A stretch of 64,000 nucleotides of DNA from positions 1 through 64,000 of the IMG/VR virus record IMGVR_UViG_3300029286_000009; one strand, given 5' to 3'. Position 1 is the first letter of the stretch. Each line of letters opens with the position of its first letter. Shown one piece after another: positions 15,501-30,342 of this stretch. Both the position numbers and the translations under genes were made by a program. The notes under the pieces were generated by a model. It ran no database searches, was not told the origin of the DNA, and saw only the letters and a list, made by a program, of their open reading frames with translations.

Positions 15501-18500
15501 CTACTGCATGGCACAGTTCTACTAATAGTGGGATTACATGGCAGACATTGACTTCGGGTAATCCGTTCACAGAAACAGTTATGTGGAATGAGCCTATCAA
15601 TCCTTACAATACTGATTGGAAGGTATATAATTGGGCTAAATCAGACTCAGTTACGATAAGTGGCGGGCTTCTTAGTATAACAACTATACCCAGGTATTAT
15701 ACAGTAGAATCTGGGGCATGGTTGGCTCCCACATACTTCCAAGATGTGGCACGTAGTGATACATTCTTACTAGAGACTCAAATTTTAGGGGGTATGACTC
15801 AACAGCCCGGTACAGACGTTTCAGCTGGTATTGTTATATTTGATAAGGAAGATAATACAAAGTCTTTCCGCATAGAACGTTATACGGGTAATAATTTGTC
15901 TACTGTATCTGGGGGGTTTAATGAAGACAATGCACACTTAAATTATGCTTTTGGTGACTACGTTCGTTGGGGACCGCAAGTTAATTTTGCAGGAGTAAGT
16001 GGGTGTAGTCCGGATTGCTTGACTACTAGTCGTTATGAATATAGCTTACTACTTAAATTGATACAGAATGGTAACGCAGTAGATGTATTTTACCGCTTAC
16101 CTTATGAAGGTTGGACTACCGTGAGTTCTTATTCTATAGTAGATTGGTCAAAAAACATTCGGATAGGTGTTTATGGGAATACACAGGCAGTATCGAAGGT
16201 AATAAATAATATTAAAGTACCCGCAACTTTTGACTATCTCTCCTATAAAGATAGTACCCCCCGCAGAGTTGAGGACTTTAACCAAGATTGTAATTTTTCG
16301 GAGCTAACTACCACTTGGAGTGGTTGGACGGCTTACAATACCGAACATACGTCTCTGTTTTGTACCTCAGCAGATGCAGAAGGTAGTTTAAAAATTCGTA
16401 AATGGGTCAATGATTCTGATTTCAAGTATTTTGATCACTATCTCCAATCTCCAGCCCTGCTAACTACGTGGGGTTCTATTACAGACTACGATGATGTTTT
16501 ATTTAGGTTGACGGGGTATGATGACCGATTAATGGTATCAGGTAGTTATTCAGCAGGGTTACTTTTGAGAGATTCCAGTGACTACAATAACAGTATAAAA
16601 TATGCTTACTGTGGTGCGAATAGGTTGGAAATCAGGGAAAATGGTGGTAATAAAAACTACTTAACAATTGATCCAGTCACTTCTACATCCGGGCTTTGGC
16701 TTAAACTTGATAAAGCATGCGGGGTAGTTGTATTAGGGTACTCCTACGACGGCTCTAATTTTGAGGTTGCCTCGGGGATTAGTCTGTGGGATTGGTCTGA
16801 GGAAGCTGAAGTTGAACTAGCAGTAGCAACTGATGTAGGAGACATTACATTTGATTACTTTCAATTTGGGCGATCTAGGTTAGACGCCACTAACATGGCT
16901 GCTTCATTTAATCCTAAGCTACCTTTGTTGAACATATATGGAACTGGGTTTGATTGGGGCACTCTCTATTATAGCACTGCATCTGGGCTAGAGAATTTTA
17001 CAACTACTAAACCCCCAGCAGTGTCCCACGTGATGTTTTTAAAAGACCAGGAAAACGATGTAGACTTTGACGCAGTAAAGTTTATTCCTGATGTAAGAGC
17101 AGCAAAGTCAGAGCATTTTTCCTTGAATATGTTCGAAATACCCCAGGCAAACCAGCAACTATTTGATTACACTGGCTCCCTTATGCTTGTTGACCCAGTC
17201 TTGACCGAATCGGGCAGTGGTTGGTCCGAGAATCTTTCCTATAAAGGAATTCCGCTATATGATTCCCCGGTGTTACTACTAGACCTACGAGAGGTGTACA
17301 ACCTTGGACGTTGCCCGTTAGCTACTAACCTCGCAACAGGTAGGTTTTCTGCCACAGATACAAACTATCCAATAGACGCAACATGGGGAGACCAGTCGTA
17401 TGAGCAAGTTGGTTTTGGTGTACAGTGCAAGTATAGCTCTAGTAACCAATGTACCTTAGACCCCTCCGCCGGGAAACCACGCATGATATATGCTGAAGAT
17501 GAGCTTCCTAAATACTATTTTCCCAACACCTGTAATGGGGTTTCAGGTACCGCTGGCGATGTGCGAAAAGTGTGTGAGTATTTTACTCCTGGATCGGCAA
17601 GGTGGGTTATGCTGGAGAGTAAAGACTTCTTATCCACGACAGCATCAGCAACAGCGATGTGGTTTCTAGGACCAACCGAAGTTAATCACATACAGAGACC
17701 AGTAGCACTCACACATGACTACAACTGGTGGTCAACTGCTTATGGTAAGACAGCATGGACTAGTGGCACCAGCGACAACTCAGATGACGCTCTTGTTTAT
17801 TTGTACCCAGGTTCTGGTATTGCGGGCACCTGTGGGTTTAATCCTACTGGAAATCCTTACTGGCGGTTCTCTACTGATCGTAATTGGACATGGGAAGACC
17901 AGTTCAGTATAGACATAAAAATGACTAACCCGGAGAATATTGATAAAATGCAGATAAAGTTGGGACGAGACCCCTACTGCTACTGGTTATTTACAGTCAC
18001 TGGCACATTGTCCACGACTTGGCAAACGCATGTCTTCCATTATAAAGAAGCAGAACGCATAATAGCCAAAGATACCGGTTTATCAGAACCAGTATACACG
18101 ACTGCTGATGCAGAATTTTACGAGGTGGATGACGCCCCATACTCACCTATGCCCTATCTAAACCATGGTTATATAGAAATGACTGTTTCGGGTTCAGATG
18201 GGACGGATGTATACATCCGTGGCTTAAAGAATGTTAGAACTAGGTTTAAAGATGGATGGATGTTTTTAGGTGTAGATGAGTCACTATATATACCTGATAT
18301 TGATTTGGTGAATACCGGGACAATTAGCTTCAACTACAAGCCCTCAGAAGCAGCGGTAAAGTTGGTAGAAGCTGACCACCGTGAATTTATGTTTGATATA
18401 CTAAACATTAGCAACTCAGAAGCAAGTATAAGTCTTGTCTTAAACCCCCAGTATGGGTGGGAGGTATTTTGTTGGGGAATACAGGAGCAACAAATTCTTG

Positions 18501-19051
18501 ATTATATACCAACTGTAAAAGAGTCCGAGTCAATACTCCCTTCGTCTTCAAATCCTGGACCTTTCGAGATAGTCCTCAGCTGGGCACCTGACCATATACC
18601 GGGACTAACTGACTCTATTGTATTATGGGTAAATGGGATTAAAGTTTGTGCTGGAGACTTCGCTTCGTTAGGCAGCTCATTCAAGACAGACGATATTAAA
18701 ATAACTTTGGGGAGGGGAGCCTCAATCATACATGACGAGGATAAAACATTGCATGCCGCCTATGCTTGGTTCTCTGACCTGAAGATATTCAAATACGCAG
18801 TTAATAAGCCTACTACTAACGTAGAGGATGCTTCTCTTATACCAGAAAATATGCTTGAGTTATCAGAGGATGGAATAGCATGGAAGTCTTTTGCTAATGG
18901 AGAACTCCCCATTCGTGTGTCTGGTGTAGAGAATAGGGAAGGTGTAACATTCTACATGCGAAATAAACGTCCCAAGAAGGATGTTAAGTTACTGCAAAAA
19001 AGAGGACAGGCGTCACTAATAGTAATGTGGGAAGTTAGCCAATCATGGTAA
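12575..19051 (+). CDS. Large (2158 aa) putative tail/baseplate protein with carbohydrate-binding and ConA/LamG-like domains
   Basis: CBM-like motif PDGNWHRY...W.GNITNLRFYP; two ConA-like units (SAGIVIFD...LKL...W...ATFDY and SAGLLL...LWLKL...TFDYF); C-terminal LamG-like GTISF...LWVNG...ITLG...FSDLKIF. Confidence 0.6.
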   Translation: MAINIQAEYNLLNECKYIKNKDRCVHDTNHGFEALFGKGNCGFTNNTNMDWLCPSGLFLWGIASAESCYISLADPLSATFEADYFGDFEIDMLVRYDEDSIILASETLVGRLEWQTEVDSSWEDAAYVELEITPDGNWHRYTKVMFENPYWVGNITNLRFYPFTNGVASVEFMIKRLAFRSDTHYKCKYPPCAFNDSYSHPCSAIGKAARAYSITRVNQATVDVDNFRIGVSLDDYSIQYIDLDLNHCTDNYAIAQELTIKMNTLSFGGYKFAECYYDDVAENFSIYTGTKGKNGSVNIYHGGDKDVSVSLGFFSDTDTPTWRSESGIDPVDGFISAYQKIPATVLYRLPNSESPLITFDPAEPMVYAGRANLQSLPMETTIEEGNVPGSLFLDIFGRANYEGYINHVQFKGNIISGQSRIFLLRPIATLTFSIMYISDLLTSSDLVSGQDSLHQIDINWYLRPGDIFGLYMCLPALDIDDNSKVRPDMQYKYSWIDLRDTSLAVGDSLTYTTENIKFYGFQGLPVYGYSDTLIPGYGIEAELRYEYGVSHVAMVGTESNCKVDMDLMTLDITKVRVSSNVTTGDLQDAPSADLLTVFSEEDDPDNWWIEFWFPTYVKSVYKIVTTFEDSENIRGFDWEYYLNENDRGTLSWTEEFKYPTEAVGVGSAVGWLRLGLPLYVYLDGSTDMTQHPYIGQNYVTDDPYDYYPGVTDQQRITRFTKAYGVRWNKLEQIFYPVDTHGLRLYVWRWASARITSVQIWAQLTSTETILHAIEGWGASGPLVFDTERYNVVDRTGELWQSSRISRAKTSDYTYGLDFDFQDNDDMTTVVAEVGTTMSHLEIDLVSLPVQIQQIKLIPQHIAVQLREADSKEPITEISNLSWGSPSDGSDYTYGPAQPYTVYNDTGFRAALILNIADPLAVDQSCVFYSTLASSGSLSDPARGTYADIIRSPDTYITNDKGINYHARVYTPIEVTPTAWHSSTNSGITWQTLTSGNPFTETVMWNEPINPYNTDWKVYNWAKSDSVTISGGLLSITTIPRYYTVESGAWLAPTYFQDVARSDTFLLETQILGGMTQQPGTDVSAGIVIFDKEDNTKSFRIERYTGNNLSTVSGGFNEDNAHLNYAFGDYVRWGPQVNFAGVSGCSPDCLTTSRYEYSLLLKLIQNGNAVDVFYRLPYEGWTTVSSYSIVDWSKNIRIGVYGNTQAVSKVINNIKVPATFDYLSYKDSTPRRVEDFNQDCNFSELTTTWSGWTAYNTEHTSLFCTSADAEGSLKIRKWVNDSDFKYFDHYLQSPALLTTWGSITDYDDVLFRLTGYDDRLMVSGSYSAGLLLRDSSDYNNSIKYAYCGANRLEIRENGGNKNYLTIDPVTSTSGLWLKLDKACGVVVLGYSYDGSNFEVASGISLWDWSEEAEVELAVATDVGDITFDYFQFGRSRLDATNMAASFNPKLPLLNIYGTGFDWGTLYYSTASGLENFTTTKPPAVSHVMFLKDQENDVDFDAVKFIPDVRAAKSEHFSLNMFEIPQANQQLFDYTGSLMLVDPVLTESGSGWSENLSYKGIPLYDSPVLLLDLREVYNLGRCPLATNLATGRFSATDTNYPIDATWGDQSYEQVGFGVQCKYSSSNQCTLDPSAGKPRMIYAEDELPKYYFPNTCNGVSGTAGDVRKVCEYFTPGSARWVMLESKDFLSTTASATAMWFLGPTEVNHIQRPVALTHDYNWWSTAYGKTAWTSGTSDNSDDALVYLYPGSGIAGTCGFNPTGNPYWRFSTDRNWTWEDQFSIDIKMTNPENIDKMQIKLGRDPYCYWLFTVTGTLSTTWQTHVFHYKEAERIIAKDTGLSEPVYTTADAEFYEVDDAPYSPMPYLNHGYIEMTVSGSDGTDVYIRGLKNVRTRFKDGWMFLGVDESLYIPDIDLVNTGTISFNYKPSEAAVKLVEADHREFMFDILNISNSEASISLVLNPQYGWEVFCWGIQEQQILDYIPTVKESESILPSSSNPGPFEIVLSWAPDHIPGLTDSIVLWVNGIKVCAGDFASLGSSFKTDDIKITLGRGASIIHDEDKTLHAAYAWFSDLKIFKYAVNKPTTNVEDASLIPENMLELSEDGIAWKSFANGELPIRVSGVENREGVTFYMRNKRPKKDVKLLQKRGQASLIVMWEVSQSW

Positions 19052-21045
19052 TTATTGTAACTGATGCTGGTTTAGAAGTGGACGGCATCTTACTTAGCAA
19101 TACTGCAGAAATACAGACATTTATTGATGTGCACACACCACAAGACTTGAATATAAATATAAGTCCGATTCCGCCTAGTGACCTAACTGCTCACATAGGG
19201 GCTCATTTACCTTTTGACTTTCCTATCGAGTTAATAGCATCATCGTATCATCCTATGTCAGACCTCTACACCTATATAAGCGTGCACGTGCCTGCTGACT
19301 TCACAACACTGGTAGGGGCACACTTACCACACAATCTGAATATTCCTATTGGTGCCCATAGTCCTCGTGATATAACGTTCGGGATGGTGGCAGTACCTTA
19401 CGTAGAGCTGGATATTATTATAGATTGGATTGTTCACCAATCCGATATTAACACCGTAGTTGGTTCTCACATACCCTATGATTTGGGGGCGTATTTTAAT
19501 GTATGGAACATATCCAATATACAGGTAAGGATAGGTACGTCTATACCAAAAGATTTGTGCTTTATTCTCAGAGCTTTCGGGCAGGGTAACAGCGATCTTA
19601 CTGTTAGAACCGCTGCAACACACACTAGTTGCCTGGATTTTAGTTATATCATGTACGTGTGGGGGGCTAAAGATTTTCAAATCACTATTGGAACAAGTAT
19701 AAAACACGATTTGTCATTGCTCATGCAAACTTGGCATATTAGAGATGTTAACGTTTGTATTGATACTGTGTTTCCTAAAACCTTAGAGATGAGTATTACC
19801 CCGATCCCAGAAGAAGGATATGACCTAAATGTGATACATCGCATACATCAAAAGGTGGCTCTTTTTGCCGAGTTTAATATTTGGGAAGGTATCTCTACTC
19901 TGAGTGCTACTTTATTGGGATTGTACCCTTACGACCTTAGTGTTGGGTTTACAATGGGTAGTTACTCACCACTGTATATTACACTGCCCATGACCACTGG
20001 GTATAAAGACTTGGTTGTTACTCTTAAATCTGCTACCCGCATTATGTCTACTATTATAACTGTATACACGATGGAGATTAAAGACTTATATGTTTCTATA
20101 AATCAAGGTTGGCCTTGTGGGTTTGGCTCGTCGTATATGCTGCTTGAGGTTGTATTAAACCCAAAATTCTTCTTGAATTTCACTGCTCTTATACGGGCTA
20201 TTGATGGTAGTGGCAGTGCAGTTATAGCAAATTATGTCAACAAACCTTATTTTGATACATTTATAGCGATACAAAAAATACAGATTAGTTTGCCGGAAGA
20301 CCAGAGCACACCAGAAGCAATTATTGTAGACAAGACTGACCTTACATACGAAAATCAATTCTATCAAACTGCACAAGATGTTGTCAGAGTAAGATTTCCC
20401 TGGCCACGTTTCCGTCGTATACCTTCTTATATAGAGTTTTCTGTCATTCTGACTCCATTTCATGGGAATACCTATGCTGATATTATGGTGTACATTCATG
20501 CTGTACGACCAGAGTCGCCTAGGATGCCTACATCACGACCTTTAATTTTGAGAGAGGGCATGGGAGCATCTGATCCAATATGGCCTGATATATTCCAGGT
20601 TAAAGAAATCGAATTGTGGTCAGACGATATGAAAGACTTGGTTAGAAAAATAGATATTACTTTTGGTGAACAAATACGAGAGTATTACTGGGTTTCAAGT
20701 GAGCAACGTGCCTATAGTAAAAATATGTGGGAAACTAAATGGACCATTTTAGGCAGAGGTTATTTACCTCATACAGAGTATAGTGGACAAATAGATTATG
20801 TTACTATGAGAGAAATAAGTGATATGAAAAAATACAACACAATAGACGAAGCTATACGGGCTCTCATTAGTAACTTTTTATATTCCGGTAAGTCTGACAT
20901 ACAAATTCTTATTGGCACCATGGGTTATTATTCTGAGCTATCTGTAATGGTAGATATTCGGGGGCGTGATCGCTTTACCAACCTTCGTGTGTATATTGAA
21001 CCAATGCGAGCATGCGACCTAACAATAACATTGCAATGCCAGTAA
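19045..21045 (+). CDS. Putative fibre-like structural protein with ~12-residue beta repeats
   Basis: N-terminal half is built of D-L-x-x-x-I-x-x-H-x-P-x repeats, e.g. DLTAHIGAHLPF, DFTTLVGAHLPH, NLNIPIGAHSPR, DINTVVGSHIPY. Confidence 0.55.
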   Translation: MVIIVTDAGLEVDGILLSNTAEIQTFIDVHTPQDLNINISPIPPSDLTAHIGAHLPFDFPIELIASSYHPMSDLYTYISVHVPADFTTLVGAHLPHNLNIPIGAHSPRDITFGMVAVPYVELDIIIDWIVHQSDINTVVGSHIPYDLGAYFNVWNISNIQVRIGTSIPKDLCFILRAFGQGNSDLTVRTAATHTSCLDFSYIMYVWGAKDFQITIGTSIKHDLSLLMQTWHIRDVNVCIDTVFPKTLEMSITPIPEEGYDLNVIHRIHQKVALFAEFNIWEGISTLSATLLGLYPYDLSVGFTMGSYSPLYITLPMTTGYKDLVVTLKSATRIMSTIITVYTMEIKDLYVSINQGWPCGFGSSYMLLEVVLNPKFFLNFTALIRAIDGSGSAVIANYVNKPYFDTFIAIQKIQISLPEDQSTPEAIIVDKTDLTYENQFYQTAQDVVRVRFPWPRFRRIPSYIEFSVILTPFHGNTYADIMVYIHAVRPESPRMPTSRPLILREGMGASDPIWPDIFQVKEIELWSDDMKDLVRKIDITFGEQIREYYWVSSEQRAYSKNMWETKWTILGRGYLPHTEYSGQIDYVTMREISDMKKYNTIDEAIRALISNFLYSGKSDIQILIGTMGYYSELSVMVDIRGRDRFTNLRVYIEPMRACDLTITLQCQ

Positions 21046-21325: not shown

Positions 21326-22498
21326 ATGCGTGTAAAGGTTCCTACAAGTGACTTCCTACGAATGCTCACCAAATTGAAGCCGATGCGGGCTGTGTCGACC
21401 ACCGGATTTACTTTTGCAGTTTACACATTTGATGCCTATGAGGACAAATTTAGGGTTGTAGTTAGTGATAACGCTGGTGTAACAGCAACGACCGAGATAT
21501 TTGCAAAGGTAGTGACCCCTGGACGAGTTAGTGTGAATGGTACAGATTTTTTTCAGTTACTCGCGAAGATAACTCCAGCCACTTCGCAGGGTTCGGGGTC
21601 TGAGGTAATTGAATTGTACGTCGATGGTACCAAGCTTATATTGTTAACGGACAGTAAATATGGAGCTAATAAAAAGAATGTTCATCAAAGGCGCAATTTT
21701 TCGTTAGTAAAGACTGATCTTTATTTCAATCCTGACTTTCCTGTATCGCCCAATGGATTAGATGTAGTTCTGCCGGGCAGTTATCTATCAGATATATTTA
21801 GAATTTTATCTAGGTTAATTTCTAACTATACATCGGATATCGCAGGACTCTCTGGTATTTTGTTGCGGTGCGAGGACCAAAGAATTCATTTTGTTGTATC
21901 GGACGGTTTTAGGATTGTAGAAATAAATTATCCAGGGCGACTTCAAGTGAACAATTTTGACTTAATTATTCCTAAGATGAGCTGTAATATGTTGCAGTCC
22001 CTGATAGATGATGGAGACGAGGTTAGTCTTAGGGCAGATAACTATAAAGCGTTGTTCACAATAGAGAACAATGGATTAACTACAACATTAACTACCCCGT
22101 TAATTAAAGCCAATTTTCCGCCATATCATATGATATTTGATACACCTGGATTAAGCTATATCTTAGATACAAAAATCCTCTTAGACAACGTGTCGAATGT
22201 TAGACGGGCAATAGATGATGATACTTACAGATTAAGATTGTCATTTGAAAATACTGGTTTATCAGTGTCTAATTACCAGGCGGGTCACGCTGACTTTGTC
22301 AATCAAGGAATACCCTTGACTCAGTTTGAAGCACCGGCAACCCTTTTGATTAATGGTTTTCTTCTGGAAAACTCTCTCTCGTTGTTGGGTGCTGAAATGA
22401 TAAAGTTGGTAGTTCCACCCGAAGACAGACCAATCATAATTGATAATCTGGATAGTAAACTTCACGTGAGAATAGCTGTTGCACTATCCAACGAATAA
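21326..22498 (+). CDS. dnaN: DNA polymerase III beta subunit (sliding clamp)
   Basis: 390 aa. VVSDGFRI resembles VATDGHRL, LIKANFPPY resembles LIDGRFPDY, LSGILL resembles LNGVLL; GGAGG RBS. Confidence 0.8.
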   Translation: MRVKVPTSDFLRMLTKLKPMRAVSTTGFTFAVYTFDAYEDKFRVVVSDNAGVTATTEIFAKVVTPGRVSVNGTDFFQLLAKITPATSQGSGSEVIELYVDGTKLILLTDSKYGANKKNVHQRRNFSLVKTDLYFNPDFPVSPNGLDVVLPGSYLSDIFRILSRLISNYTSDIAGLSGILLRCEDQRIHFVVSDGFRIVEINYPGRLQVNNFDLIIPKMSCNMLQSLIDDGDEVSLRADNYKALFTIENNGLTTTLTTPLIKANFPPYHMIFDTPGLSYILDTKILLDNVSNVRRAIDDDTYRLRLSFENTGLSVSNYQAGHADFVNQGIPLTQFEAPATLLINGFLLENSLSLLGAEMIKLVVPPEDRPIIIDNLDSKLHVRIAVALSNE

Positions 22499-23201: not shown

Positions 23202-24416
23202 TTGGCAGCCAGAAAGGATAAAAAAAATGAAGAGGAAGCTAAGCTTACTAAAGGTACGAAAGGGACTGAATTTAAAAAAGAAAAAAAGGAGATAGATCCG
23301 CTAAAGGCATTTCAGATGACGTCGGCGGCGGTAGAGACCAAGTTCGCTGAGACTGCTTATCATGCGTGGCTACATGACGCTGAGAAGATGAAACAGTACC
23401 GTTTCAGTAGTGGGTCAATTAGTGTAGATACAGCCTTAGGGGGCGAGGGTTTACCGTACGGGAGAATAATCGAAGTTTGGGGACCTTCTCAAAGTGGCAA
23501 AACAAGTTGGGCGTTGGAGACCGCATGGCACTTACAACGGCGTAGACGAGAAGAAGGAAAGGGCTACGGTGTTGTATTTATGGATATCGAACATAAATTT
23601 GACCGCAGGCTACTCTACCAGTGGCGGGGTGGTTTTCTTCCAGAAGCAACCAAGTTTGAGGAACCATTTACAGGTGACGCCGCCTTTGGTATGTTACTAC
23701 ACTATGTAGAAAGTATGGGTACGTGTATGGTAATTGTGGATAGTGTGAGTGCTATACGTTCTTCTGAAATGCTAGACAAAGATGACCAGAAGACCAATTT
23801 CGGGGCACCTGCAAAACTTATTGGGGATTGGTTGCCAAAGATTTCTACTGCAGCAACGATGACTGGGGTTCCTATTATGTTTGTTAACCAGGTCAGAGCA
23901 AAATTAGACGCGGGCCCCAAAGCGATGGGGCGAGCCAAACTGCGTAAATATGGGGGCATGGCTTATGACCACTGGGTTTGTGTTAGCTTATACTTGGGTA
24001 AATCCACTGTGATAAATGACGGTCTGCGGGACTTGGGGCATATGGCGAAGATGGTAATATACAAAAATCATAGTGGACCCACTATGTTCAAGGAATTTAA
24101 GTTGAAATTAGACTATGGGAGACAGTTTGATACAACATATGAGTTAGTAGACCGTGCTACTCAGTTAAGTATAATTTCTGGTGGGGCAGGCGGGCACTAC
24201 AAAATAGGGGATGTTGCTATTCACGGTAAGGACAATTTGTATGCTGAGGTTCGTGGTAACCTTGGGCTTCAGTCTTACTTATGGGATGAAATAATGAAGA
24301 TGCAAGTGCACCAACCACTCCCAGAAACAGACCTTTCTACTACATCGTGGGCAATTGAAGATGAAGGAGTAGAAATTACTTTGGACGACCACGAAGAAGG
24401 TTTATTGGAAGAATAA
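23202..24416 (+). CDS. recA: RecA/UvsX-family recombinase
   Basis: SSGSISVDTALGGEGLPYGRIIEVWGPSQSGKT (Walker A), FMDIEH, VIVDSVSA (Walker B), FVNQVR; TTG start. Confidence 0.93.
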   Translation: MAARKDKKNEEEAKLTKGTKGTEFKKEKKEIDPLKAFQMTSAAVETKFAETAYHAWLHDAEKMKQYRFSSGSISVDTALGGEGLPYGRIIEVWGPSQSGKTSWALETAWHLQRRRREEGKGYGVVFMDIEHKFDRRLLYQWRGGFLPEATKFEEPFTGDAAFGMLLHYVESMGTCMVIVDSVSAIRSSEMLDKDDQKTNFGAPAKLIGDWLPKISTAATMTGVPIMFVNQVRAKLDAGPKAMGRAKLRKYGGMAYDHWVCVSLYLGKSTVINDGLRDLGHMAKMVIYKNHSGPTMFKEFKLKLDYGRQFDTTYELVDRATQLSIISGGAGGHYKIGDVAIHGKDNLYAEVRGNLGLQSYLWDEIMKMQVHQPLPETDLSTTSWAIEDEGVEITLDDHEEGLLEE

Positions 24417-24430
24417 TTAAGGAGAATTTA

Positions 24431-25000
24431 GTGGAAAAGGAATTAGTTGAATACAAAGAATTTGACTTTATGGGAGATAACTTAATCGCGGTTGAATACC
24501 AAGGACAATGGTATGTTTCTCCGCGACGTATATGCGATAATATAGGGATATCTTGGAGTTCTCAACTACAGAAACTACAGGCACATCCAGACAAATTCGG
24601 TTGTGCAAGGGTTAAGATGCCCGGAAAAGATGGTAAAAAGCATAGTATGTTAGGTATCCCAGAAAAGAACATTGAACAATTTGTGAAAACAGTCAACCCG
24701 AACAGGGTAGGTAATAAAAAAAATGTAGTATATTTCATTCAGATAAAAAATGGCCCAATAAAGATTGGATTGACAGGTAATGTAAAAAATAGACTTAAAT
24801 CATTATCGTGTTCTTTGCCTTATGATTTAGAATTGTTACACGTAATGCCTGGGGATGAGAAATTAGAAAAGAAACTCCATAAGAAATTTTGTAAATATCA
24901 TATACGAGGAGAATGGTTCGAATGCCACGATGGTATATTGAATTACCTAAAAAAATTACAGTCCAAGAACTCTCAAGTGGCAAAGAACATAGAGCTATGA
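24431..25000 (+). CDS. P22 antirepressor-N-like domain fused to a T5orf172/GIY-YIG-like domain
   Basis: N-terminal YVSPRRICDNIGISWSSQLQKL; C-terminal VYFIQ...IKIG.T...RL..L...E..LH..F...IRGEWF. Confidence 0.75.
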   Translation: MEKELVEYKEFDFMGDNLIAVEYQGQWYVSPRRICDNIGISWSSQLQKLQAHPDKFGCARVKMPGKDGKKHSMLGIPEKNIEQFVKTVNPNRVGNKKNVVYFIQIKNGPIKIGLTGNVKNRLKSLSCSLPYDLELLHVMPGDEKLEKKLHKKFCKYHIRGEWFECHDGILNYLKKLQSKNSQVAKNIEL

Positions 25001-25341: not shown

Positions 25342-25800
25342 TTGTCTAAAGAAAAAACAAAATGGTTTGTGGAGGAGTTATTAAAAGGTTATCCAGACCC
25401 GGAAGATTTAGTTGCCCGTGGATTTAGTGATGAATTTATACTGGGCATTTCCTTTATACAAGATGAATTATTGAGTATGACAATGCTGGCTTTGTCTCGC
25501 TTTCTCTGCCATATTCAGTTCTTTGGGAACCAGACGAAAGCGGGAGTAATAAATTTACGTCGAAAATTGGAAGGCACAAAATACCAAACAATTTCTTCAC
25601 TTAAAGATATAACCGATCGAAGTACTAGTGCACAAATGACTGCTAAGGCTTACGCGTCTAATCCTGATTTATACACGATGGAAAAAGAATTAGCATTGCT
25701 TGAAGAGCGTGCAGAATATTATAATTACATGCCAGAAAGAATCCAAGAGTATATACAGGTGCTTAAATACGAGATGAGGCGTAGAGAAGCGAGAAAATAA
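25342..25800 (+). CDS. Hypothetical helical protein (possible UvsY-like recombination mediator)
   Basis: 152-aa alpha-helical ORF between recA and dnaB; the UvsY idea rests on size and position only. Confidence 0.45.
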   Translation: MSKEKTKWFVEELLKGYPDPEDLVARGFSDEFILGISFIQDELLSMTMLALSRFLCHIQFFGNQTKAGVINLRRKLEGTKYQTISSLKDITDRSTSAQMTAKAYASNPDLYTMEKELALLEERAEYYNYMPERIQEYIQVLKYEMRRREARK

Positions 25801-27266
25801 TGACAGAAATAGAAAAGACTTTTGAGCATTTACATACTGAGCGGGCGATATTGGCGTGCATATTTAAGAAACCAGATCTTTTAATTGATCTGGATGGCGT
25901 AGTAGCAGTTGATGCGTTTAAGTCACCTGTAAACCGATCGGTTATGCAAGCAACTTTGGACTTATACGAACTCGGTTATTCAAAGTTAGATGCAGAGATG
26001 GTTTACAACAAGTTGTTGCTGAGCCCAGTCGCGGGGCTAGACACAGAGCAGCTTAGAATGTATCTGAACTCTCTTTACAGCGCAGAAGTATATATTGATA
26101 ACTTTAAAACCTTAGTATCGGACCTAGCTGATGTGGATGTAAAAGAACGTGTAAGGCAACTCCTGCATAGTAGTTTAGATGATCTTTATAGGACTAAGGA
26201 GCGGATATCGGCGGGGGAATTTATTGTAGATTTACAGAATAATTTGTTTACTCTTGAGGGAAAATTTAACGCAAAGAATGATGAGCCGCGTGATGTGTGT
26301 TCGGGCATCAGAGACCGGATGGTTGACCGTGTAAATCATCCCAATGACTACAGTGGCATCCCTAGTGGTATGCAGATACTTGATGACATCACAATGGGGT
26401 GGCTTAAAACCAAGTTCTATTTTGTGGCGGCACGTCCCAAAACTGGTAAGTCCTCGTTACTATCCCAGTGGGCATATCATGCTGCTTTTTTTGCCCCTCT
26501 CAGGCATTATCGGGTACTATATTTAGATACAGAGATAAAGCCCGACGAGTTTGAGTGCAGGATGGTGGGACACATTAGTGCAGTAGACCATATGCGTTTA
26601 ATGCAGGGGGATTGGTATCAAAACCAGCAAGCTTCCGAGAATATCATAACTACACTTAATTTTCTAGAGAAAAATCAGGGTATTTTATACCATAAATATA
26701 TACCCAATTTTAAGATTGCCAGTATAGTTAGTCTAATAAAAAAATATGTTTATAACCATGGTATAGATATAGTTTTTTTTGATTATATAAAGGAACCAGA
26801 TGAAGCAGGTGATAGAGCACGTTGGCAGAAAATTGGAGACCTAGCACGGGCATTAAAAAATATGGGTGGCGAACTTGATATACCTGTTTTGAGTGCTCTT
26901 CAGCAAAACCGAAAAGGAGAAGGACAAAGTAGAACTGGTGGAGAAGCATATGGGGAATCTGATGATGTATTAAAAGAATGTGACGCCGCATTTATGCTTA
27001 ACTGGAAGAGCCACAAGGAAATGCGAGATGAGACACTACGGGCTGGTACGCATCGATTTCAAATTGAGCGGGCCCGTTATGTAAAGAGCTTTTATAACGG
27101 AATAAACTTCCGGTTCTACGGGTATTGTTTGCGGTTTGTTCCGTCACCAATCCAGAATTTAGTTGACGCAATGACTATGCCAGCAGATCATAGAGAGGAA
27201 AATGTCTATTCAGCTATACCACAACTCACGGAGGAAAAAGTCGAAACCCTTGTCCTCCCAAATTGA
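25800..27266 (+). CDS. dnaB: DnaB-like replicative helicase
   Basis: ERAILAC N-terminal domain, GIPSGMQILD, VAARPKTGKS (Walker A), VLYLDTE, IVFFDYI, ELDIPVLSALQQNR. Confidence 0.92.
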   Translation: MTEIEKTFEHLHTERAILACIFKKPDLLIDLDGVVAVDAFKSPVNRSVMQATLDLYELGYSKLDAEMVYNKLLLSPVAGLDTEQLRMYLNSLYSAEVYIDNFKTLVSDLADVDVKERVRQLLHSSLDDLYRTKERISAGEFIVDLQNNLFTLEGKFNAKNDEPRDVCSGIRDRMVDRVNHPNDYSGIPSGMQILDDITMGWLKTKFYFVAARPKTGKSSLLSQWAYHAAFFAPLRHYRVLYLDTEIKPDEFECRMVGHISAVDHMRLMQGDWYQNQQASENIITTLNFLEKNQGILYHKYIPNFKIASIVSLIKKYVYNHGIDIVFFDYIKEPDEAGDRARWQKIGDLARALKNMGGELDIPVLSALQQNRKGEGQSRTGGEAYGESDDVLKECDAAFMLNWKSHKEMRDETLRAGTHRFQIERARYVKSFYNGINFRFYGYCLRFVPSPIQNLVDAMTMPADHREENVYSAIPQLTEEKVETLVLPN

Positions 27267-28275
27267 CCGTTCAAAGGTAGAGTATGTTAAGGAGATCGCA
27301 GACCCCGAGCTAGTGGCTTCTAGCTTGGGTGTTCATTTTTATGGGCACAGAGGAAGGTATTTGCGTGCAGCATGCCCGGTACATAACGGGGATAATAAAA
27401 CAGCTTTTAGTCTAGATATACAGACTGGGGCGTGGGCTTGTTTCACAGAAGGTTGTCATCATGGCTATAGTGATATAATTGGGCTAGTAGAATTGGTACG
27501 TCGGTGCAATTTTATTGAAGCAATTAAGTATATCGCCGCGTTGTCAGGTATTAATCTGGATAATTCTACATCAGACGATGTGGCGGGGGCTTTGTATCGT
27601 AAGGATGTGCGTGATTTTGTTAATAGAACAAATAAAGTTCATTCTGGGACCGATTTGGGTACTATAATTAATATAGAGGAACAAATTCATGGATGGGTTA
27701 CTTGCCGGTCCGACTATTTTACAAGGAGGGGTTACACACCAAGCATACTAGACTATTTTGAGATTGGATCATCCTATGATGCAAGAAGAACACCGCGTGA
27801 GATCATACCCATACGTGATATGAATGGTCGGGTGGTAGCTTTAGATGGTAGGCGTACGGACTCCGATGAAAATCCCCGCTATTTAATAAATCCACCGGGA
27901 TTTGCAAAGGGGGGAGTTCTATATCATTACCATAAGGCTAAAGATTACATAGCCGTTTTCCAAGGGAAGATTTTTGTGGTGGAAGGGTACAAGGCTTGTT
28001 GGTCAATGGTGCAAGCAGGTTACTTGAACACAGTAGCATGTATGGGAGCTGGATTTCATGGGCAGCAAGCAGGAGTTCTGTTACAGAACATGTCCTTACA
28101 GAAAGTGATAGTAGTTTTGGACGGAGATATTGCAGGTAGAAATGGAGCTAGAAGAACTAAAAGTGAACTTAATCATCTTTGTGAAATATCAATGGTAGAT
28201 ATGCCAGAGGGGGAAGACCCCAGTACACTACCACCAAATGTTTTACATTCACTACTATATCCGCATATTAACTAA
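27202..28275 (+). CDS. dnaG: DnaG-type DNA primase (CHC2 zinc finger plus Toprim)
   Basis: CPVH...CF..GC zinc finger, IIPIRD..GRVV...GR, VVEGY, LDGDIAG, EDP. The exact start is uncertain because of the overlap with dnaB. Confidence 0.9.
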   Translation: MSIQLYHNSRRKKSKPLSSQIDRSKVEYVKEIADPELVASSLGVHFYGHRGRYLRAACPVHNGDNKTAFSLDIQTGAWACFTEGCHHGYSDIIGLVELVRRCNFIEAIKYIAALSGINLDNSTSDDVAGALYRKDVRDFVNRTNKVHSGTDLGTIINIEEQIHGWVTCRSDYFTRRGYTPSILDYFEIGSSYDARRTPREIIPIRDMNGRVVALDGRRTDSDENPRYLINPPGFAKGGVLYHYHKAKDYIAVFQGKIFVVEGYKACWSMVQAGYLNTVACMGAGFHGQQAGVLLQNMSLQKVIVVLDGDIAGRNGARRTKSELNHLCEISMVDMPEGEDPSTLPPNVLHSLLYPHIN

Positions 28276-28295
28276 TAGGAGAAAATGCTAAAAAC

Positions 28296-28967
28296 ATGGA
28301 AGAAGTTTACAATCCTTACACACAACAGCAGACGCCAGCACAACCACAACAACAAGTAGTTTATAATCCGCAACCGAATAGCTATACTGCGGCAGGGCAA
28401 CAGCTTCCGCCACAGCAACAACAGGTGTACGTGCAGCCCCCACAGCCAGTACCGCAGCAGGTTCAACCACCTGTGTATCCGCAGAACGGGCAACTGGGGC
28501 AACAACCACAGCAAGCTAATGTTTACAATCCTTATGCTCAGGGCGGGGGGCAGCAAGCCCCAGTTCAAGCCCCACCAGCTCAGGCCCCGAGGACAGTGTT
28601 TCCGAAGTTGCCTACACAATCGGGGCAACCCATGGGTAACCGGCATCTTGTTGTAATTGATGGGTATCTTAACTCTCCTAAATATACACCTCTTGCTAAT
28701 GGTGCTCGTTTGGGTTTCTTTATTTTATGGGAGAGACAAATATGGGAAAATGGTCAGCCTAAAAGAGATCAGAACGGTATGATTGAGATACGTGATGAGC
28801 GATTCTTGTGTCAGGCATGGGGTGATTTAGCCAATGGTCTTGCTCAACTACCAGAGGGTACCCCGATCACTATCTACGGAATGGTGAACAGGTGGAATGC
28901 GGCACGACAAGGACAGCCCGATAATTGGCTCACTGATATTAGGGTAAATAAGGTTGAACTACTGTAA
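28296..28967 (+). CDS. ssb: Single-stranded DNA-binding protein with a long N-terminal Q/P-rich disordered region
   Basis: C-terminal OB fold (VVIDGYL...P.YT...FLCQAWGDLA...GTPITIYG...TDIRVNKVELL). The first ~110 aa are Q/P-rich. Confidence 0.72.
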   Translation: MEEVYNPYTQQQTPAQPQQQVVYNPQPNSYTAAGQQLPPQQQQVYVQPPQPVPQQVQPPVYPQNGQLGQQPQQANVYNPYAQGGGQQAPVQAPPAQAPRTVFPKLPTQSGQPMGNRHLVVIDGYLNSPKYTPLANGARLGFFILWERQIWENGQPKRDQNGMIEIRDERFLCQAWGDLANGLAQLPEGTPITIYGMVNRWNAARQGQPDNWLTDIRVNKVELL

Positions 28968-28973
28968 GACGAA

Positions 28974-29777
28974 ATGAATCAAGATTATTATCAGACATTA
29001 GGGGTGTCCAAGGGTGCGTCGGACGAAGAGATAAAGAAGGCATACCGCCAATTAGCGATGGAGACACACCCAGATCGAAATCCTGATGACCCCAAAGCAG
29101 AAGAGAGGTTTAAACAGATTGGGGAAGCGTATGAAGTGCTTTCTGACCCACAAAAGAGAGCACAATACGATCACCCCAATACGTTTGGGAGTTTTCCGTT
29201 TAATCATGTTTTCTCGGCGTTCGGGGGCGGATTTAATCCATTTTCCGTGGAACGCCCACCCCCTTCTCCGATCCCCCGTGGAACTATACGAGGGAGGAAT
29301 TTAGAAATAAATATTAAGGTATCTCCTTTTGATCTATTGTTGGAAAAAGAGATATTAATTAACCTACCACGGATGACGCATTGCAAGAGTTGTGGCAGTC
29401 GCGGAGCAGATTTAAAGCACTGTGAAGCATGCGGGGGTTATGGAGTTAAACGTGATGTAAAAGTTGGTGGACACCAGAGAATCGTAAGAGAAACCCCTTG
29501 TAGTGATTGTCAGGCGACTGGGATTATAAAGGAGAATATGTGTAATGATTGTGGTGGGACTGGGCTTGTGACCTCCTCTGAAATGGTTAAGATAAAATTA
29601 CAAGCTGCAGTGGGTAACACGTTAGTTCTACCTGACATGGGGCATTTTGGTCCGTATGGGGGTCCCCCTGGACAGTTAATAACTTATATTGATATTATAT
29701 TTCCAGAATCTATCCCAGATGAAGCAAAAAAGAAAATAGAGGAGGCAGTCAATTTAATTAATCAACAAGGAAATTGA
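28974..29777 (+). CDS. dnaJ: DnaJ-like co-chaperone
   Basis: J-domain DYYQTLGV...HPDRNP...AYEVLSD, G/F region, four CxxC(x)G-type zinc motifs; shortened C-terminus. Confidence 0.92.
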
Positions 29778-29778
29778 T

Positions 29779-30342
29779 ATGCGTATAGTAGCAATTGATG
29801 GGGCATTGAACCATAGTGGGTGGGTAGTATTGGATGTTGATGCTGAGAAACTAGAAAGTATTAAATCAGTAAAAAATGGGAAAATAGTGCCAAAGACAAA
29901 TATGTCTTTGGCTTCTAAACTTTTGTATATTAGACAAGAGCTCATAAAACTGTTTAGGACTTACGAGCCAGATATGATTGTGTTTGAGGACACATATGCA
30001 GGTAAAAATCCCAAGACAACTTCTCGGCTAAATAATGCAAAGGGTGTCATCCTTATGACTGCTTATGAGTGGCTGAACAAGGAACCCGCATGTGTTAAAG
30101 CGATAGAGGCGCGTGCTTGTCTGGGTTTCAAAAACGGTAAAGAGCCCAAGAGGGAACCTTGGGAGTATTTTAGGGCTAAATATAAATTAAAAATGGGTTT
30201 TAAGGCAGGGAATGATATTACAGATGCTTACACGTTAGGGTGGTGGTACGTAAAGTCAACAGGAGAAGGTTGTGTGGAACGAAAAAAGCAAAGTTTACGA
30301 CTAAAGAAGGTGGCTACCCGTGATAACAAAAGATATGGATAA
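29779..30342 (+). CDS. ruvC: RuvC-like Holliday junction resolvase
   Basis: MRIVAIDG...SGW, PDMIVFED, L..AKGVI, NDITDA. Confidence 0.82.
   Translation: MRIVAIDGALNHSGWVVLDVDAEKLESIKSVKNGKIVPKTNMSLASKLLYIRQELIKLFRTYEPDMIVFEDTYAGKNPKTTSRLNNAKGVILMTAYEWLNKEPACVKAIEARACLGFKNGKEPKREPWEYFRAKYKLKMGFKAGNDITDAYTLGWWYVKSTGEGCVERKKQSLRLKKVATRDNKRYG

What the first reader, a model, noticed from the sequence alone, without database searches (positions are those of the whole stretch)
28296..28967. Inverted SSB: prion-like Q/P/Y domain at the N-terminus and no acidic C-terminal tip
Seen: about 110 N-terminal residues are almost uncharged and Q/P-rich with spaced tyrosine motifs (VYNPY, VYNPQ, VYVQP, VYPQ, VYNPY), followed by an OB fold that ends at the stop (KVELL). 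Known: bacterial SSBs have the OB fold first, then a G/Q/P-rich linker and a DDDIPF tip, and that tail supports condensate formation. Inference: a permuted architecture with sticker-spacer composition that could nucleate phage replication condensates, or use VYNPY as a docking motif for phage partners instead of host ones.
Basis: partly seen in the sequence, partly recalled or inferred. Interest (0 to 1): 0.6.

Follow-up and report, generated by a model that had tools for sequence, protein, structure and literature searches.

The report
Phage SSB with its tail in front
A small lineage of uncultured giant phages encodes a single-stranded-DNA-binding protein whose flexible tail and conserved end-motif sit before the DNA-binding domain instead of after it, giving a natural test of whether the tail's position matters.

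Summary
Window 28296-28967 (+) encodes a 223-aa protein. Residues 1-102 are Q/P-rich (28% Q, 21% P, 8% Y) and nearly uncharged. A conserved junction (103-112) follows, then an OB domain that runs to the stop.

The domain is a bacterial-type SSB fold: AF2 pLDDT 94, Foldseek and VIA top hits all SSBs (Z 13.7), and family profile against PDB SSBs E 3e-5 after removing the one classical member. A four-copy model supports self-assembly (0.73 against a best control of 0.01).

The tail is made:
- All loci with DNA have an AAGGAG Shine-Dalgarno before the first ATG.
- The tip M-E-x-V-Y-[NDQ]-P is conserved in relatives down to 34% identity.
- 6 of 12 relatives lack an internal Met.

Tail aromatics are evenly spaced (0 of 3000 shuffles as extreme) and Y-x-P motifs are 2.4-fold enriched. 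The family is tiny (17 hits among 1.84 billion representatives) and always lies between DnaG and DnaJ-RuvC.

Whether the tail recruits partners or drives condensation is inference. I found no published precedent, so I call it a new variant of a known kind.

The parts
28277..28281 (+). Shine-Dalgarno-like AGGAG, 14 nt before the first ATG
   Evidence: Equivalent AAGGAG/TAAGGAG sits 6-10 nt before the first ATG in L002, L004, L006 and L007. No internal Met has one at a usable distance.
28296..28967 (+). Full coding sequence of the permuted SSB (223 aa plus stop)
   Evidence: The single copy in the 259,732-bp virus record.
28296..28319 (+). Conserved N-terminal tip, residues 1-8 (MEEVYNPY)
   Evidence: Identical in P0002 and P0014. 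M-E-x-V-Y-[ND]-P in P0005, the L004 ORF and P0006. Looser forms occur in P0008-P0013 and P0020. P7 is invariant in alignment A3.
28296..28601 (+). Low-complexity, nearly uncharged Q/P/Y tail, residues 1-102, with Y-N-P at 5-7, 23-25 and 77-79
   Evidence: Composition and motif statistics. The Atlas model aligns to known structures only from residue 110-115 onward. In relatives the sequence diverges but composition, tyrosine spacing and open frame are kept.
28602..28631 (+). Conserved junction, residues 103-112 (P-K-L-P-T-Q-S-G-Q-P)
   Evidence: T107 is invariant and K-L-P-T-Q-S-G-Q-P is the family consensus. Domain residues 1-6, 9 and 11 are in the modelled subunit interface.
28632..28964 (+). 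SSB-type OB domain, residues 113-223, ending at the stop
   Evidence: AF2 pLDDT 94.2. Foldseek PDB top hits are all SSBs, e.g. 3a5u at E 1.3e-7, TM 0.70. VIA gives Z 13.7. Family profile against PDB SSBs: E 1.3e-8, or 3.3e-5 without the classical member. hhalign to E. coli SSB 1-116: 92.6% probability.
25800..27266 (+). DnaB-type replicative helicase (neighbour)
   Evidence: Pfam DnaB_C at 4e-26.
27202..28275 (+). DnaG-type primase, directly upstream in every relative with context
   Evidence: Pfam Toprim_2, DNAG_N and Zn_ribbon_DnaG. Synteny.
28974..29777 (+). Truncated DnaJ (J-domain with HPD, four CxxCxGxG motifs), directly downstream in every relative with context
   Evidence: Pfam DnaJ at 9e-31. 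Synteny.
29779..30342 (+). RuvC-type resolvase (neighbour)
   Evidence: Pfam RuvC at 1.1e-9.

Best explanation
This is the SSB of the phage's replication module: a bacterial-type SSB in which the disordered linker and the conserved terminal motif have moved from the C-terminus to the N-terminus.

Shown:
- The C-terminal 111 residues form an SSB-type OB fold with the family-invariant Trp at the E. coli F60 position.
- The domain is modelled to self-assemble through the classical beta1-beta1' contact.
- The C-terminal residues and the conserved junction lie in that modelled interface.
- The full-length protein is the translated product.
- The tail keeps three features through deep divergence: an N-terminal tip, repeated Y-x-P motifs and evenly spaced aromatics.

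Inferred:
- An oligomeric OB core coats ssDNA and displays up to four N-terminal tails.
- The tails do what the linker and tip of classical SSBs do. They give weak tail-tail or tail-OB contacts (cooperativity, possibly condensates), and the tip with its Y-x-P array recruits phage replisome or chaperone partners.
- With no acidic ...D-D-D-I-P-F end, the protein should not dock host proteins through the SSB-Ct pocket.
For: Fold and homology:
- AF2 pLDDT 94.2.
- Foldseek PDB and BFVD top lists are all SSBs.
- VIA gives Z 13.7, rmsd 3.0, 102 residues aligned.
- Profile against PDB SSBs gives E 1.3e-8, and 3.3e-5 in the control without P0019.
- hhalign to E. coli SSB gives 92.6% probability with W175 on F60.
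- The Atlas structure match covers residues 115-223.

Self-assembly:
- ESMFold2 with four copies scored 0.73 against a best control of 0.01.
- In calibration the mark was reached by 20 of 30 proteins solved as pairs of one chain and by 1 of 23 solved as single chains.
- The runs agree in at least 81% of contacts and the partner pLDDT is at least 81.

Tail is made:
- The tip and junction are conserved in frame across variable-length tails.
- A Shine-Dalgarno precedes the first ATG in 5 of 5 loci with DNA.
- An internal Met is absent in 6 of 12 members.
- The short database entries are truncated calls of longer open frames.

Tail features: Y-x-P motifs number 46 against 19.5 expected, and aromatics are evenly spaced.

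Role: the gene lies between DnaG and DnaJ-RuvC, downstream of a clamp-like gene, RecA and DnaB, in every context seen.

Literature: in E. coli SSB the linker drives phase separation and the tip-OB contact enhances it (PMC7584906).
Against: - The query alone scores only 13.4 bits against Pfam SSB, where the cutoff is 26.
- W54 and W88 equivalents are offset or replaced in this member.
- The OB domain has net charge about 0.
- The genome holds a second weak SSB-like ORF at G000:C1:121820-122095 that could be the main SSB.
- The self-assembly pass may reflect the model's memory of solved SSB tetramers, and four copies plus my own alignment differ from the calibration.
- No ssDNA binding, partner binding, condensation or expression was tested.
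- The relatives share ancestry, so the shuffle statistics overstate independence.
- Synteny within one phage lineage does not prove functional linkage.
Confidence: 0.7

Rival explanations
1. The OB protein is an ordinary SSB and the tail is a tolerated low-complexity expansion (a spacer or solubility tag) with no role of its own.
For: Tail sequence and length vary widely, from 77 to 128 aa with one variant of about 40 aa, and one member has a charged rather than Q/P-rich tail. Linker sequence is also poorly conserved in classical SSBs (PMC7584906).
Against: The tip M-E-x-V-Y-[NDQ]-P and an invariant Pro persist to 34% domain identity. Aromatic spacing and Y-x-P enrichment are kept even in the charged-tail member. 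Every member keeps a tail.
Confidence: 0.12
2. Translation starts at the internal Met113, so only the 111-aa OB domain is made. This is how existing gene calls record it.
For: The public collection holds the 111-aa version (P0003) and several other short calls. The tail's codon usage evidently defeats gene callers.
Against: There is no Shine-Dalgarno before Met113, whereas the first ATG has one in all five loci with DNA. An internal Met is absent in 6 of 12 members. The tip and junction upstream of Met113 are conserved in frame. Junction residues upstream of Met113 are part of the modelled interface.
Confidence: 0.04
3. It is not the replicative SSB but a PriB-like or loader-type accessory OB protein of the primosome. 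The second SSB-like ORF elsewhere in the genome coats ssDNA.
For: PriB structures score nearly as high by fold, Z 12.0-12.8. The gene is adjacent to DnaB and DnaG. A second SSB-like ORF exists. The OB domain has net charge near 0.
Against: Sequence profiles prefer SSBs (E 3.3e-5) over PriB (E 0.5). Some members reach Pfam SSB hits on record. The second ORF scores below the Pfam cutoff too and lies outside the replication module.
Confidence: 0.1
4. The tail is a true prion or amyloid-forming domain, like the C. hominis SSB prion domain.
For: The composition is Q/N-rich and almost uncharged. A segment of an SSB linker can form a prion in E. coli (PMC10523482; cited in PMC7584906). A DnaJ gene is always adjacent.
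Against: Proline is 11-30% of the tails, which is unfavourable for a cross-beta structure. Evenly dispersed aromatics are the pattern linked in the literature to liquid rather than solid assemblies (background knowledge; see PMC8638251 on aromatic clustering).
Confidence: 0.04

Closest known systems
E. coli-type bacterial SSB (Pfam PF00436; OB, disordered linker, acidic C-terminal tip)
   Same: The OB fold matches (Z 12-14, TM about 0.7). The invariant Trp sits at the F60 position. The modelled beta1-beta1' self-assembly is the classical one. There is a Q/P/G-rich disordered segment plus a short conserved terminal motif. The gene sits in a replication module.
   Different: The order is reversed: tip, linker, then OB. 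There is no C-terminal extension, and the C-terminus lies in the modelled interface. The tip is E-E-V-Y-N-P-Y rather than D-D-D-I-P-F and cannot present a free carboxylate. The tail has 8% Tyr and 10% Val, against no Tyr and 29% Gly in the E. coli linker.
Campylobacter hominis SSB prion-forming linker, and E. coli SSB phase separation (PMC10523482, PMC7584906)
   Same: An SSB carrying a prion-like or phase-separation-prone low-complexity region. In that work the oligomeric OB core supplies multivalency.
   Different: Those regions are C-terminal. Behaviour of the phage tail is untested, and it is much richer in proline and tyrosine.
T4 gp32 (from background knowledge: an N-terminal peptide mediates cooperative binding and a C-terminal acidic domain recruits partners)
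   Same: A phage SSB that uses an N-terminal peptide for protein-protein contacts.
   Different: gp32's N-terminal segment is short and basic and the core fold is different. Here the segment is about 100 residues, neutral and aromatic. No gp32-type structure appeared in the fold hits.
Adenovirus DBP (PMC8473285)
   Same: A viral ssDNA-binding protein with an N-terminal disordered, proline-rich region of about 173 aa before the DNA-binding core. It is implicated in liquid-like replication compartments.
   Different: It is not an OB-fold SSB, comes from a eukaryotic virus, and is regulated by phosphorylation and SUMOylation. This is an analogy only.
Staphylococcus phage Phi11 Gp13 (PMC13333961)
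   Same: A phage SSB-like protein described as having its OB fold at the C-terminal end.
   Different: It is a homodimer whose N-terminal residues take part in DNA binding. No long low-complexity tail or conserved N-terminal tip is described.

Membership tests
Bacterial-type SSB (PF00436) | SSB-type OB fold | tested here: met
   AF2 pLDDT 94.2. Foldseek PDB top hits are all SSBs at E about 1e-7, TM 0.65-0.70. VIA gives Z 13.7. BFVD hits are phage Ssb proteins.
Bacterial-type SSB (PF00436) | Sequence match to the family model above the curated threshold | tested here: inconclusive
   The query alone scores 13.4 bits against a cutoff of 26. However, 9 of 16 family members match PF00436 at E up to 1. 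The family profile hits solved SSBs at E 3.3e-5 without the classical member. hhalign to E. coli SSB gives 92.6% probability.
Bacterial-type SSB (PF00436) | Aromatic ssDNA-stacking residues (E. coli W40, W54, F60, W88) | tested here: inconclusive
   From: F60 aligns with the invariant W175. A conserved aromatic at 200 lies two residues from W88. W54-H55-R56 is kept as W-H-R in P0014, P0010 and P0016, but reads R-F-L in this protein. The W40 region carries a longer loop with W145 and W150. No structural superposition at residue level was available.
Bacterial-type SSB (PF00436) | Homo-oligomer (dimer or tetramer) through beta1 pairing | tested here: met
   This is a prediction only. The score was 0.73 against a best control of 0.01. 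The mark was reached by 20 of 30 solved one-chain pairs and by 1 of 23 single chains. Contacts agree at 81% or more and pLDDT is at least 81. There is a symmetric 17:17 contact. The pass may reflect memory of solved SSB tetramers.
Bacterial-type SSB (PF00436) | C-terminal disordered linker ending in an acidic D-D-D-I-P-F-type tip | tested here: not met
   The protein ends ...KVELL at the last strand. All family members end within the domain. Only the distant classical relative P0019 ends ...N-D-E-L-P-F.
Bacterial-type SSB (PF00436) | High-affinity ssDNA binding | not testable with these tools
   This needs EMSA or fluorescence titration.
Prion-like / sticker-and-spacer low-complexity domain | Polar, Q/N-rich, charge-poor composition with evenly dispersed aromatic stickers | tested here: met
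   In this protein: Q 28%, N 6%, Y 8%, and 4 charged residues in 106. Across 12 tails, spacing of 6-10 residues is 41 against 22.0 expected and adjacent aromatics are 2 against 15.1, with 0 of 3000 shuffles as extreme.
Prion-like / sticker-and-spacer low-complexity domain | Phase separation or self-propagating aggregation | not testable with these tools
   There is no PLAAC, PScore or experiment here. High proline (21%) argues against amyloid.
PriB | Sequence membership in the PriB family | tested here: not met
   The profile gives E 0.5-0.9 to PriB chains against 3.3e-5 to SSBs. The fold similarity (Z 12-12.8) is that of the shared SSB-type OB.

The most novel reading that the evidence does not exclude
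The N-terminal tail, an array of Y-x-P motifs that are often heptad-spaced and headed by a conserved tip, is a phage-specific assembly platform. Displayed four-fold on the SSB core, it builds a liquid-like replication compartment on phage ssDNA and recruits phage replisome proteins. The DnaJ encoded immediately downstream hands this tail to host DnaK to keep the assembly fluid or to dissolve it. That would make it a phage-encoded condensate scaffold with its own dedicated co-chaperone, working independently of the host SSB-Ct interaction network.
Probability: 0.15. Interest if true: 0.85.

Novelty: new variant of a known kind. Interest (0 to 1): 0.62.

Why it matters
The order OB fold, disordered linker, conserved C-terminal tip is treated as the general plan of bacterial-type SSBs. 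The free C-terminal carboxylate of the tip is central to how SSB recruits its many partners. A natural family that puts the linker and a conserved tip in front of the OB fold, and buries the C-terminus in the oligomer, shows the plan is not obligatory.

It also provides matched material for direct questions:
- Do cooperativity and condensation depend on which end the linker is attached to?
- What does a non-acidic, N-terminal tip bind?
- Does a phage gain by uncoupling its SSB from the host's SSB-Ct network?

There is a practical lesson too. Gene callers truncate these genes to the OB domain, or call an antisense ORF across the tail. The architecture is therefore invisible in current annotations, and similar cases may be hidden elsewhere.

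Tried and rejected
- Megablast and tblastn against 50,697 phage records found no relative of the gene or its domain.
- Two IMG/VR scans found none.
- A scan of about 185,000 prokaryotic species genomes found none, so this is not a prophage or host gene.
- The metagenome scan re-found only this phage, as Ga0247841_10000060 and Ga0247840_10173361.
- The search for related loci with the 14-sequence alignment failed for lack of a conserved stretch.
- PHROGs gave nothing.
- A single-sequence search of the PDB gave only chance antibody hits.
- AF2 of the full protein with a two-row alignment was unusable at pLDDT 39. It says nothing about disorder, so I replaced it with the domain model.
- The 2025 paper on DnaJ-encoding large aquatic phages (PMC12619734) lists T4-like core genes. 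I could not show it describes this lineage, so I cite it only for phage DnaJ.
- The one complex job went to self-assembly. Tip-to-partner pairs (DnaB, DnaG, DnaJ, polymerase, OB domain) were therefore not modelled.
- The internal-start reading and PriB membership were considered and rejected; see the rival explanations.
- I dropped a possible PPxY reading of P-P-V-Y at 58-61 as irrelevant to bacteria.

Full report
**1. The observation**

Window 28296..28967 (+) is an open frame of 223 codons. Residues 1-106 are 28% Q, 21% P, 10% V, 8% Y and 8% A, with four charged residues. The protein ends ...KVELL with no extension.

The window is the first 64 kb of a 259,732-bp virus record estimated 96% complete, and the gene is single-copy there. 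The metagenome scan shows the record is Ga0247841_10000060.

**2. What the C-terminal half is**

The single sequence is only weakly SSB-like in Pfam: 13.4 bits against a cutoff of 26, although it spans profile positions 14-103 of 104. PHROGs gives nothing.

An exhaustive phmmer search of 1.84 billion representatives found only 17 proteins at E up to 1e-3. Using 16 domain sequences as the alignment, AlphaFold2 gives a confident five-stranded barrel with one helix, mean pLDDT 94.2.

- Foldseek against the PDB returns only bacterial SSBs at the top, for example 3a5u at E 1.3e-7 and TM 0.70, and E. coli 1eyg at TM 0.69 and rmsd 2.4.
- Foldseek against BFVD returns phage Ssb proteins.
- An independent aligner over 48,161 chains gives Z 13.7 (rmsd 3.0, 102 residues aligned) to H. 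pylori SSB and Z 13.7 to Coxiella SSB. PriB proteins, which share the fold, score 12.0-12.8.
- The family profile hits solved SSBs at E 1.3e-8.
- One member of that profile (P0019) is itself a classical SSB, so I repeated the search without it. The top twelve were still all SSBs (best E 3.3e-5), and PriB scored 0.5.
- hhalign to E. coli SSB residues 1-116 gives 92.6% probability. It places the family-invariant W175 on F60. A conserved aromatic at 200 falls two residues from W88. F170 falls on H55, and three relatives keep the exact W-H-R triplet.
- The ESM Atlas model of this same protein matches SSB clusters over residues 115-223 only.

**3. Self-assembly**

A four-copy ESMFold2 job on the domain scored 0.73 against a best control of 0.01. 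The mark was reached in calibration by 20 of 30 proteins solved as pairs of one chain and by 1 of 23 solved as single chains. The three runs agree in at least 81% of contacts, and the partner pLDDT is at least 81.

There are caveats. My own alignment and four copies differ from the calibration. Solved SSB tetramers may also be remembered by the model, so the pass shows likeness rather than binding.

The interface holds a symmetric beta1 contact (domain residue 17 with 17, which is protein residue 119). It also holds the segment around F170, the conserved junction (domain residues 1-6) and the last two residues of the protein. This would explain two things: why the junction P-K-L-P-T-Q-S-G-Q-P is conserved, and why no tail hangs from the C-terminus.

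**4. Is the tail made?**

The evidence is against it.

- All five loci with DNA carry AGGAG, AAGGAG or TAAGGAG 6-14 nt before the first ATG. No internal Met has one at a workable distance.
- Six of 12 long members have no Met in the 14 residues before the domain.
- The first eight residues are identical in relatives that are 67% and 38% identical in the domain. They remain recognisable as M-E-x-V-Y-[NDQ]-P, with an invariant Pro, at 34-45% identity.
- Between tip and junction every member keeps an uninterrupted frame of 77-128 codons, although the sequence there is barely alignable.
- The short database versions are calling artefacts. L004 has the full M-E-T-V-Y-D-P-Y... extension in frame above the 113-aa call. 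L011 has a Q/P/Y extension in frame to the contig edge. In one relative's contig the caller placed a 132-aa antisense gene over the tail. That mirrors the 124-aa antisense ORF at window 28272..28646. Our own gene is on record as a 111-aa product, P0003.

**5. What is conserved in the tail**

Composition is kept in 11 of 12 members: Q 14-48%, P 11-30%, aromatics 4-10%, and at most 9 charged residues. The twelfth, P0009, has 61 charged residues in 128 but keeps its tyrosines and Y-x-P motifs.

Aromatic-x-Pro motifs number 46 against 19.5 expected from shuffles and cluster in the first 50 residues. Consecutive aromatics avoid each other and favour gaps of 6-10 residues:

| Gap between aromatics | Observed | Expected |
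|---|---|---|
| 6-10 residues | 41 | 22.0 |
| Exactly 7 residues | 14 | 4.8 |
| 2 residues or fewer | 2 | 15.1 |

None of 3000 shuffles was as extreme on any of the three measures. The sequences are related and partly repetitive, so these are descriptive statistics and not independent tests. Compared with the E. coli linker (G 29%, Q 20%, P 16%, no Tyr), the phage tail is Tyr- and Val-rich and Gly-poor.

**6. Context**

The gene lies in a replication and recombination block:

| Window coordinates | Gene |
|---|---|
| 21326-22498 | clamp-like |
| 23202-24416 | RecA |
| 25800-27266 | DnaB |
| 27202-28275 | DnaG |
| 28296-28967 | this gene |
| 28974-29777 | DnaJ |
| 29779-30342 | RuvC |
| from 30573 | glycosyltransferases |

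DnaG upstream and DnaJ downstream recur in every relative with context. These contigs clearly belong to one phage lineage, so the synteny marks the gene as part of the replication module. It does not prove a specific link to DnaJ.

The lineage has no close cultured relative: DnaB is at most 27.5% identical to any phage record. No copy exists in about 185,000 prokaryotic species genomes. The classical-orientation relative P0019 sits in an unrelated phage, next to Rad52 and near DnaB.

**7. Mechanism**

*Shown:* an SSB-type OB domain at the C-terminus, predicted self-assembly, a translated and conserved N-terminal tail with a tip, no C-terminal tip, and a position in a replication module.

*Inferred:* the oligomer coats ssDNA and presents several tails. 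In E. coli SSB the linker drives phase separation and cooperativity, and the tip-OB contact enhances it (PMC7584906). A segment of the C. hominis SSB linker can even propagate as a prion (PMC10523482). The phage tail has the dispersed-aromatic pattern expected of a liquid-type sticker-and-spacer region, and too much proline for a likely amyloid.

The tip carries two acidic residues followed by V-Y-N-P-Y. That loosely echoes acidic-hydrophobic-Pro-aromatic in D-D-D-I-P-F. An N-terminal motif cannot offer the free carboxylate used by SSB-Ct pockets, however, so its partners are probably phage proteins.

The adjacent DnaJ has an HPD J-domain, four CxxCxGxG motifs and a client-binding domain, but lacks the C-terminal half. 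It could deliver the Tyr-rich tail to host DnaK. It could equally serve helicase loading, as host DnaJ and DnaK do for lambda (background knowledge). None of these partner ideas was tested.

**8. Comparison and novelty**

The domain belongs with bacterial-type SSBs by fold and by profile. The defining C-terminal linker and tip were tested and are absent, so I file it as a variant and not a standard member.

Analogies:
- T4 gp32 has an N-terminal cooperativity peptide (background knowledge).
- Adenovirus DBP has a 173-aa N-terminal disordered, Pro-rich region and liquid-like replication compartments (PMC8473285).
- Phi11 Gp13 has its OB fold at the C-terminal end (PMC13333961).

A full-text search for SSB, 'N-terminal intrinsically disordered' and OB-fold together found no paper. 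That is a limited library and not proof of absence.

**9. Limits**

A second weak SSB-like ORF elsewhere in the genome leaves open which protein is the main SSB.

Noticed in passing
window 28272-28646 (-): A 124-aa antisense ORF lies open across the low-complexity tail. In a relative's contig a 132-aa antisense gene was actually called there and the SSB was cut to 109 aa. Our own gene is on record as a 111-aa product. Gene callers systematically mis-annotate this family.
   Followed up: partly
window 28974-29777 (+): A phage DnaJ of 267 aa with an HPD J-domain, a G/F-like stretch and four CxxCxGxG motifs, but no C-terminal dimerisation half. It starts 7 nt after the SSB stop and is always the next gene in relatives. 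Its client is unknown: it could be the SSB tail, or helicase loading as in lambda.
   Followed up: partly
G000:C1:121820-122095 (-), outside the window (L003 1327-1809): A second SSB-like ORF of 160 aa scores 21.9-22.4 bits against PF00436, below the cutoff. It has a basic C-terminus and no acidic tip, so the phage has two OB candidates and neither carries an SSB-Ct.
   Followed up: partly
window 12575-21045 (+): Two very large ORFs (2158 aa and 666 aa) just upstream of the replication block have no Pfam match at E up to 0.01.
   Followed up: no
window 24431-25000 (+): A 189-aa gene with P22_AR_N plus T5orf172/MUG113 domains sits between RecA and DnaB. Two related contigs have only two small genes there where this phage has three. 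It may be an inserted mobile, nuclease-like gene.
   Followed up: partly
L010 1-540: A family member (P0012) has only about 40 in-frame residues upstream of the domain. They hold the junction and an N-N-P motif, but there is no ATG, GTG or TTG in that stretch. It could be a short-tail variant, an unusual start or an assembly error.
   Followed up: partly
window 27202-27266: The DnaB and DnaG genes overlap by 65 nt. Gene calls in related contigs show overlaps of about 20-59 nt, which suggests coupled expression.
   Followed up: no
window 28285-28295: An out-of-frame ATG lies 3 nt after the Shine-Dalgarno core and 11 nt before the real start. This leaves an unusually long 14-nt spacer to the true ATG, where relatives have 6-10 nt and no such extra ATG.
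   Followed up: no
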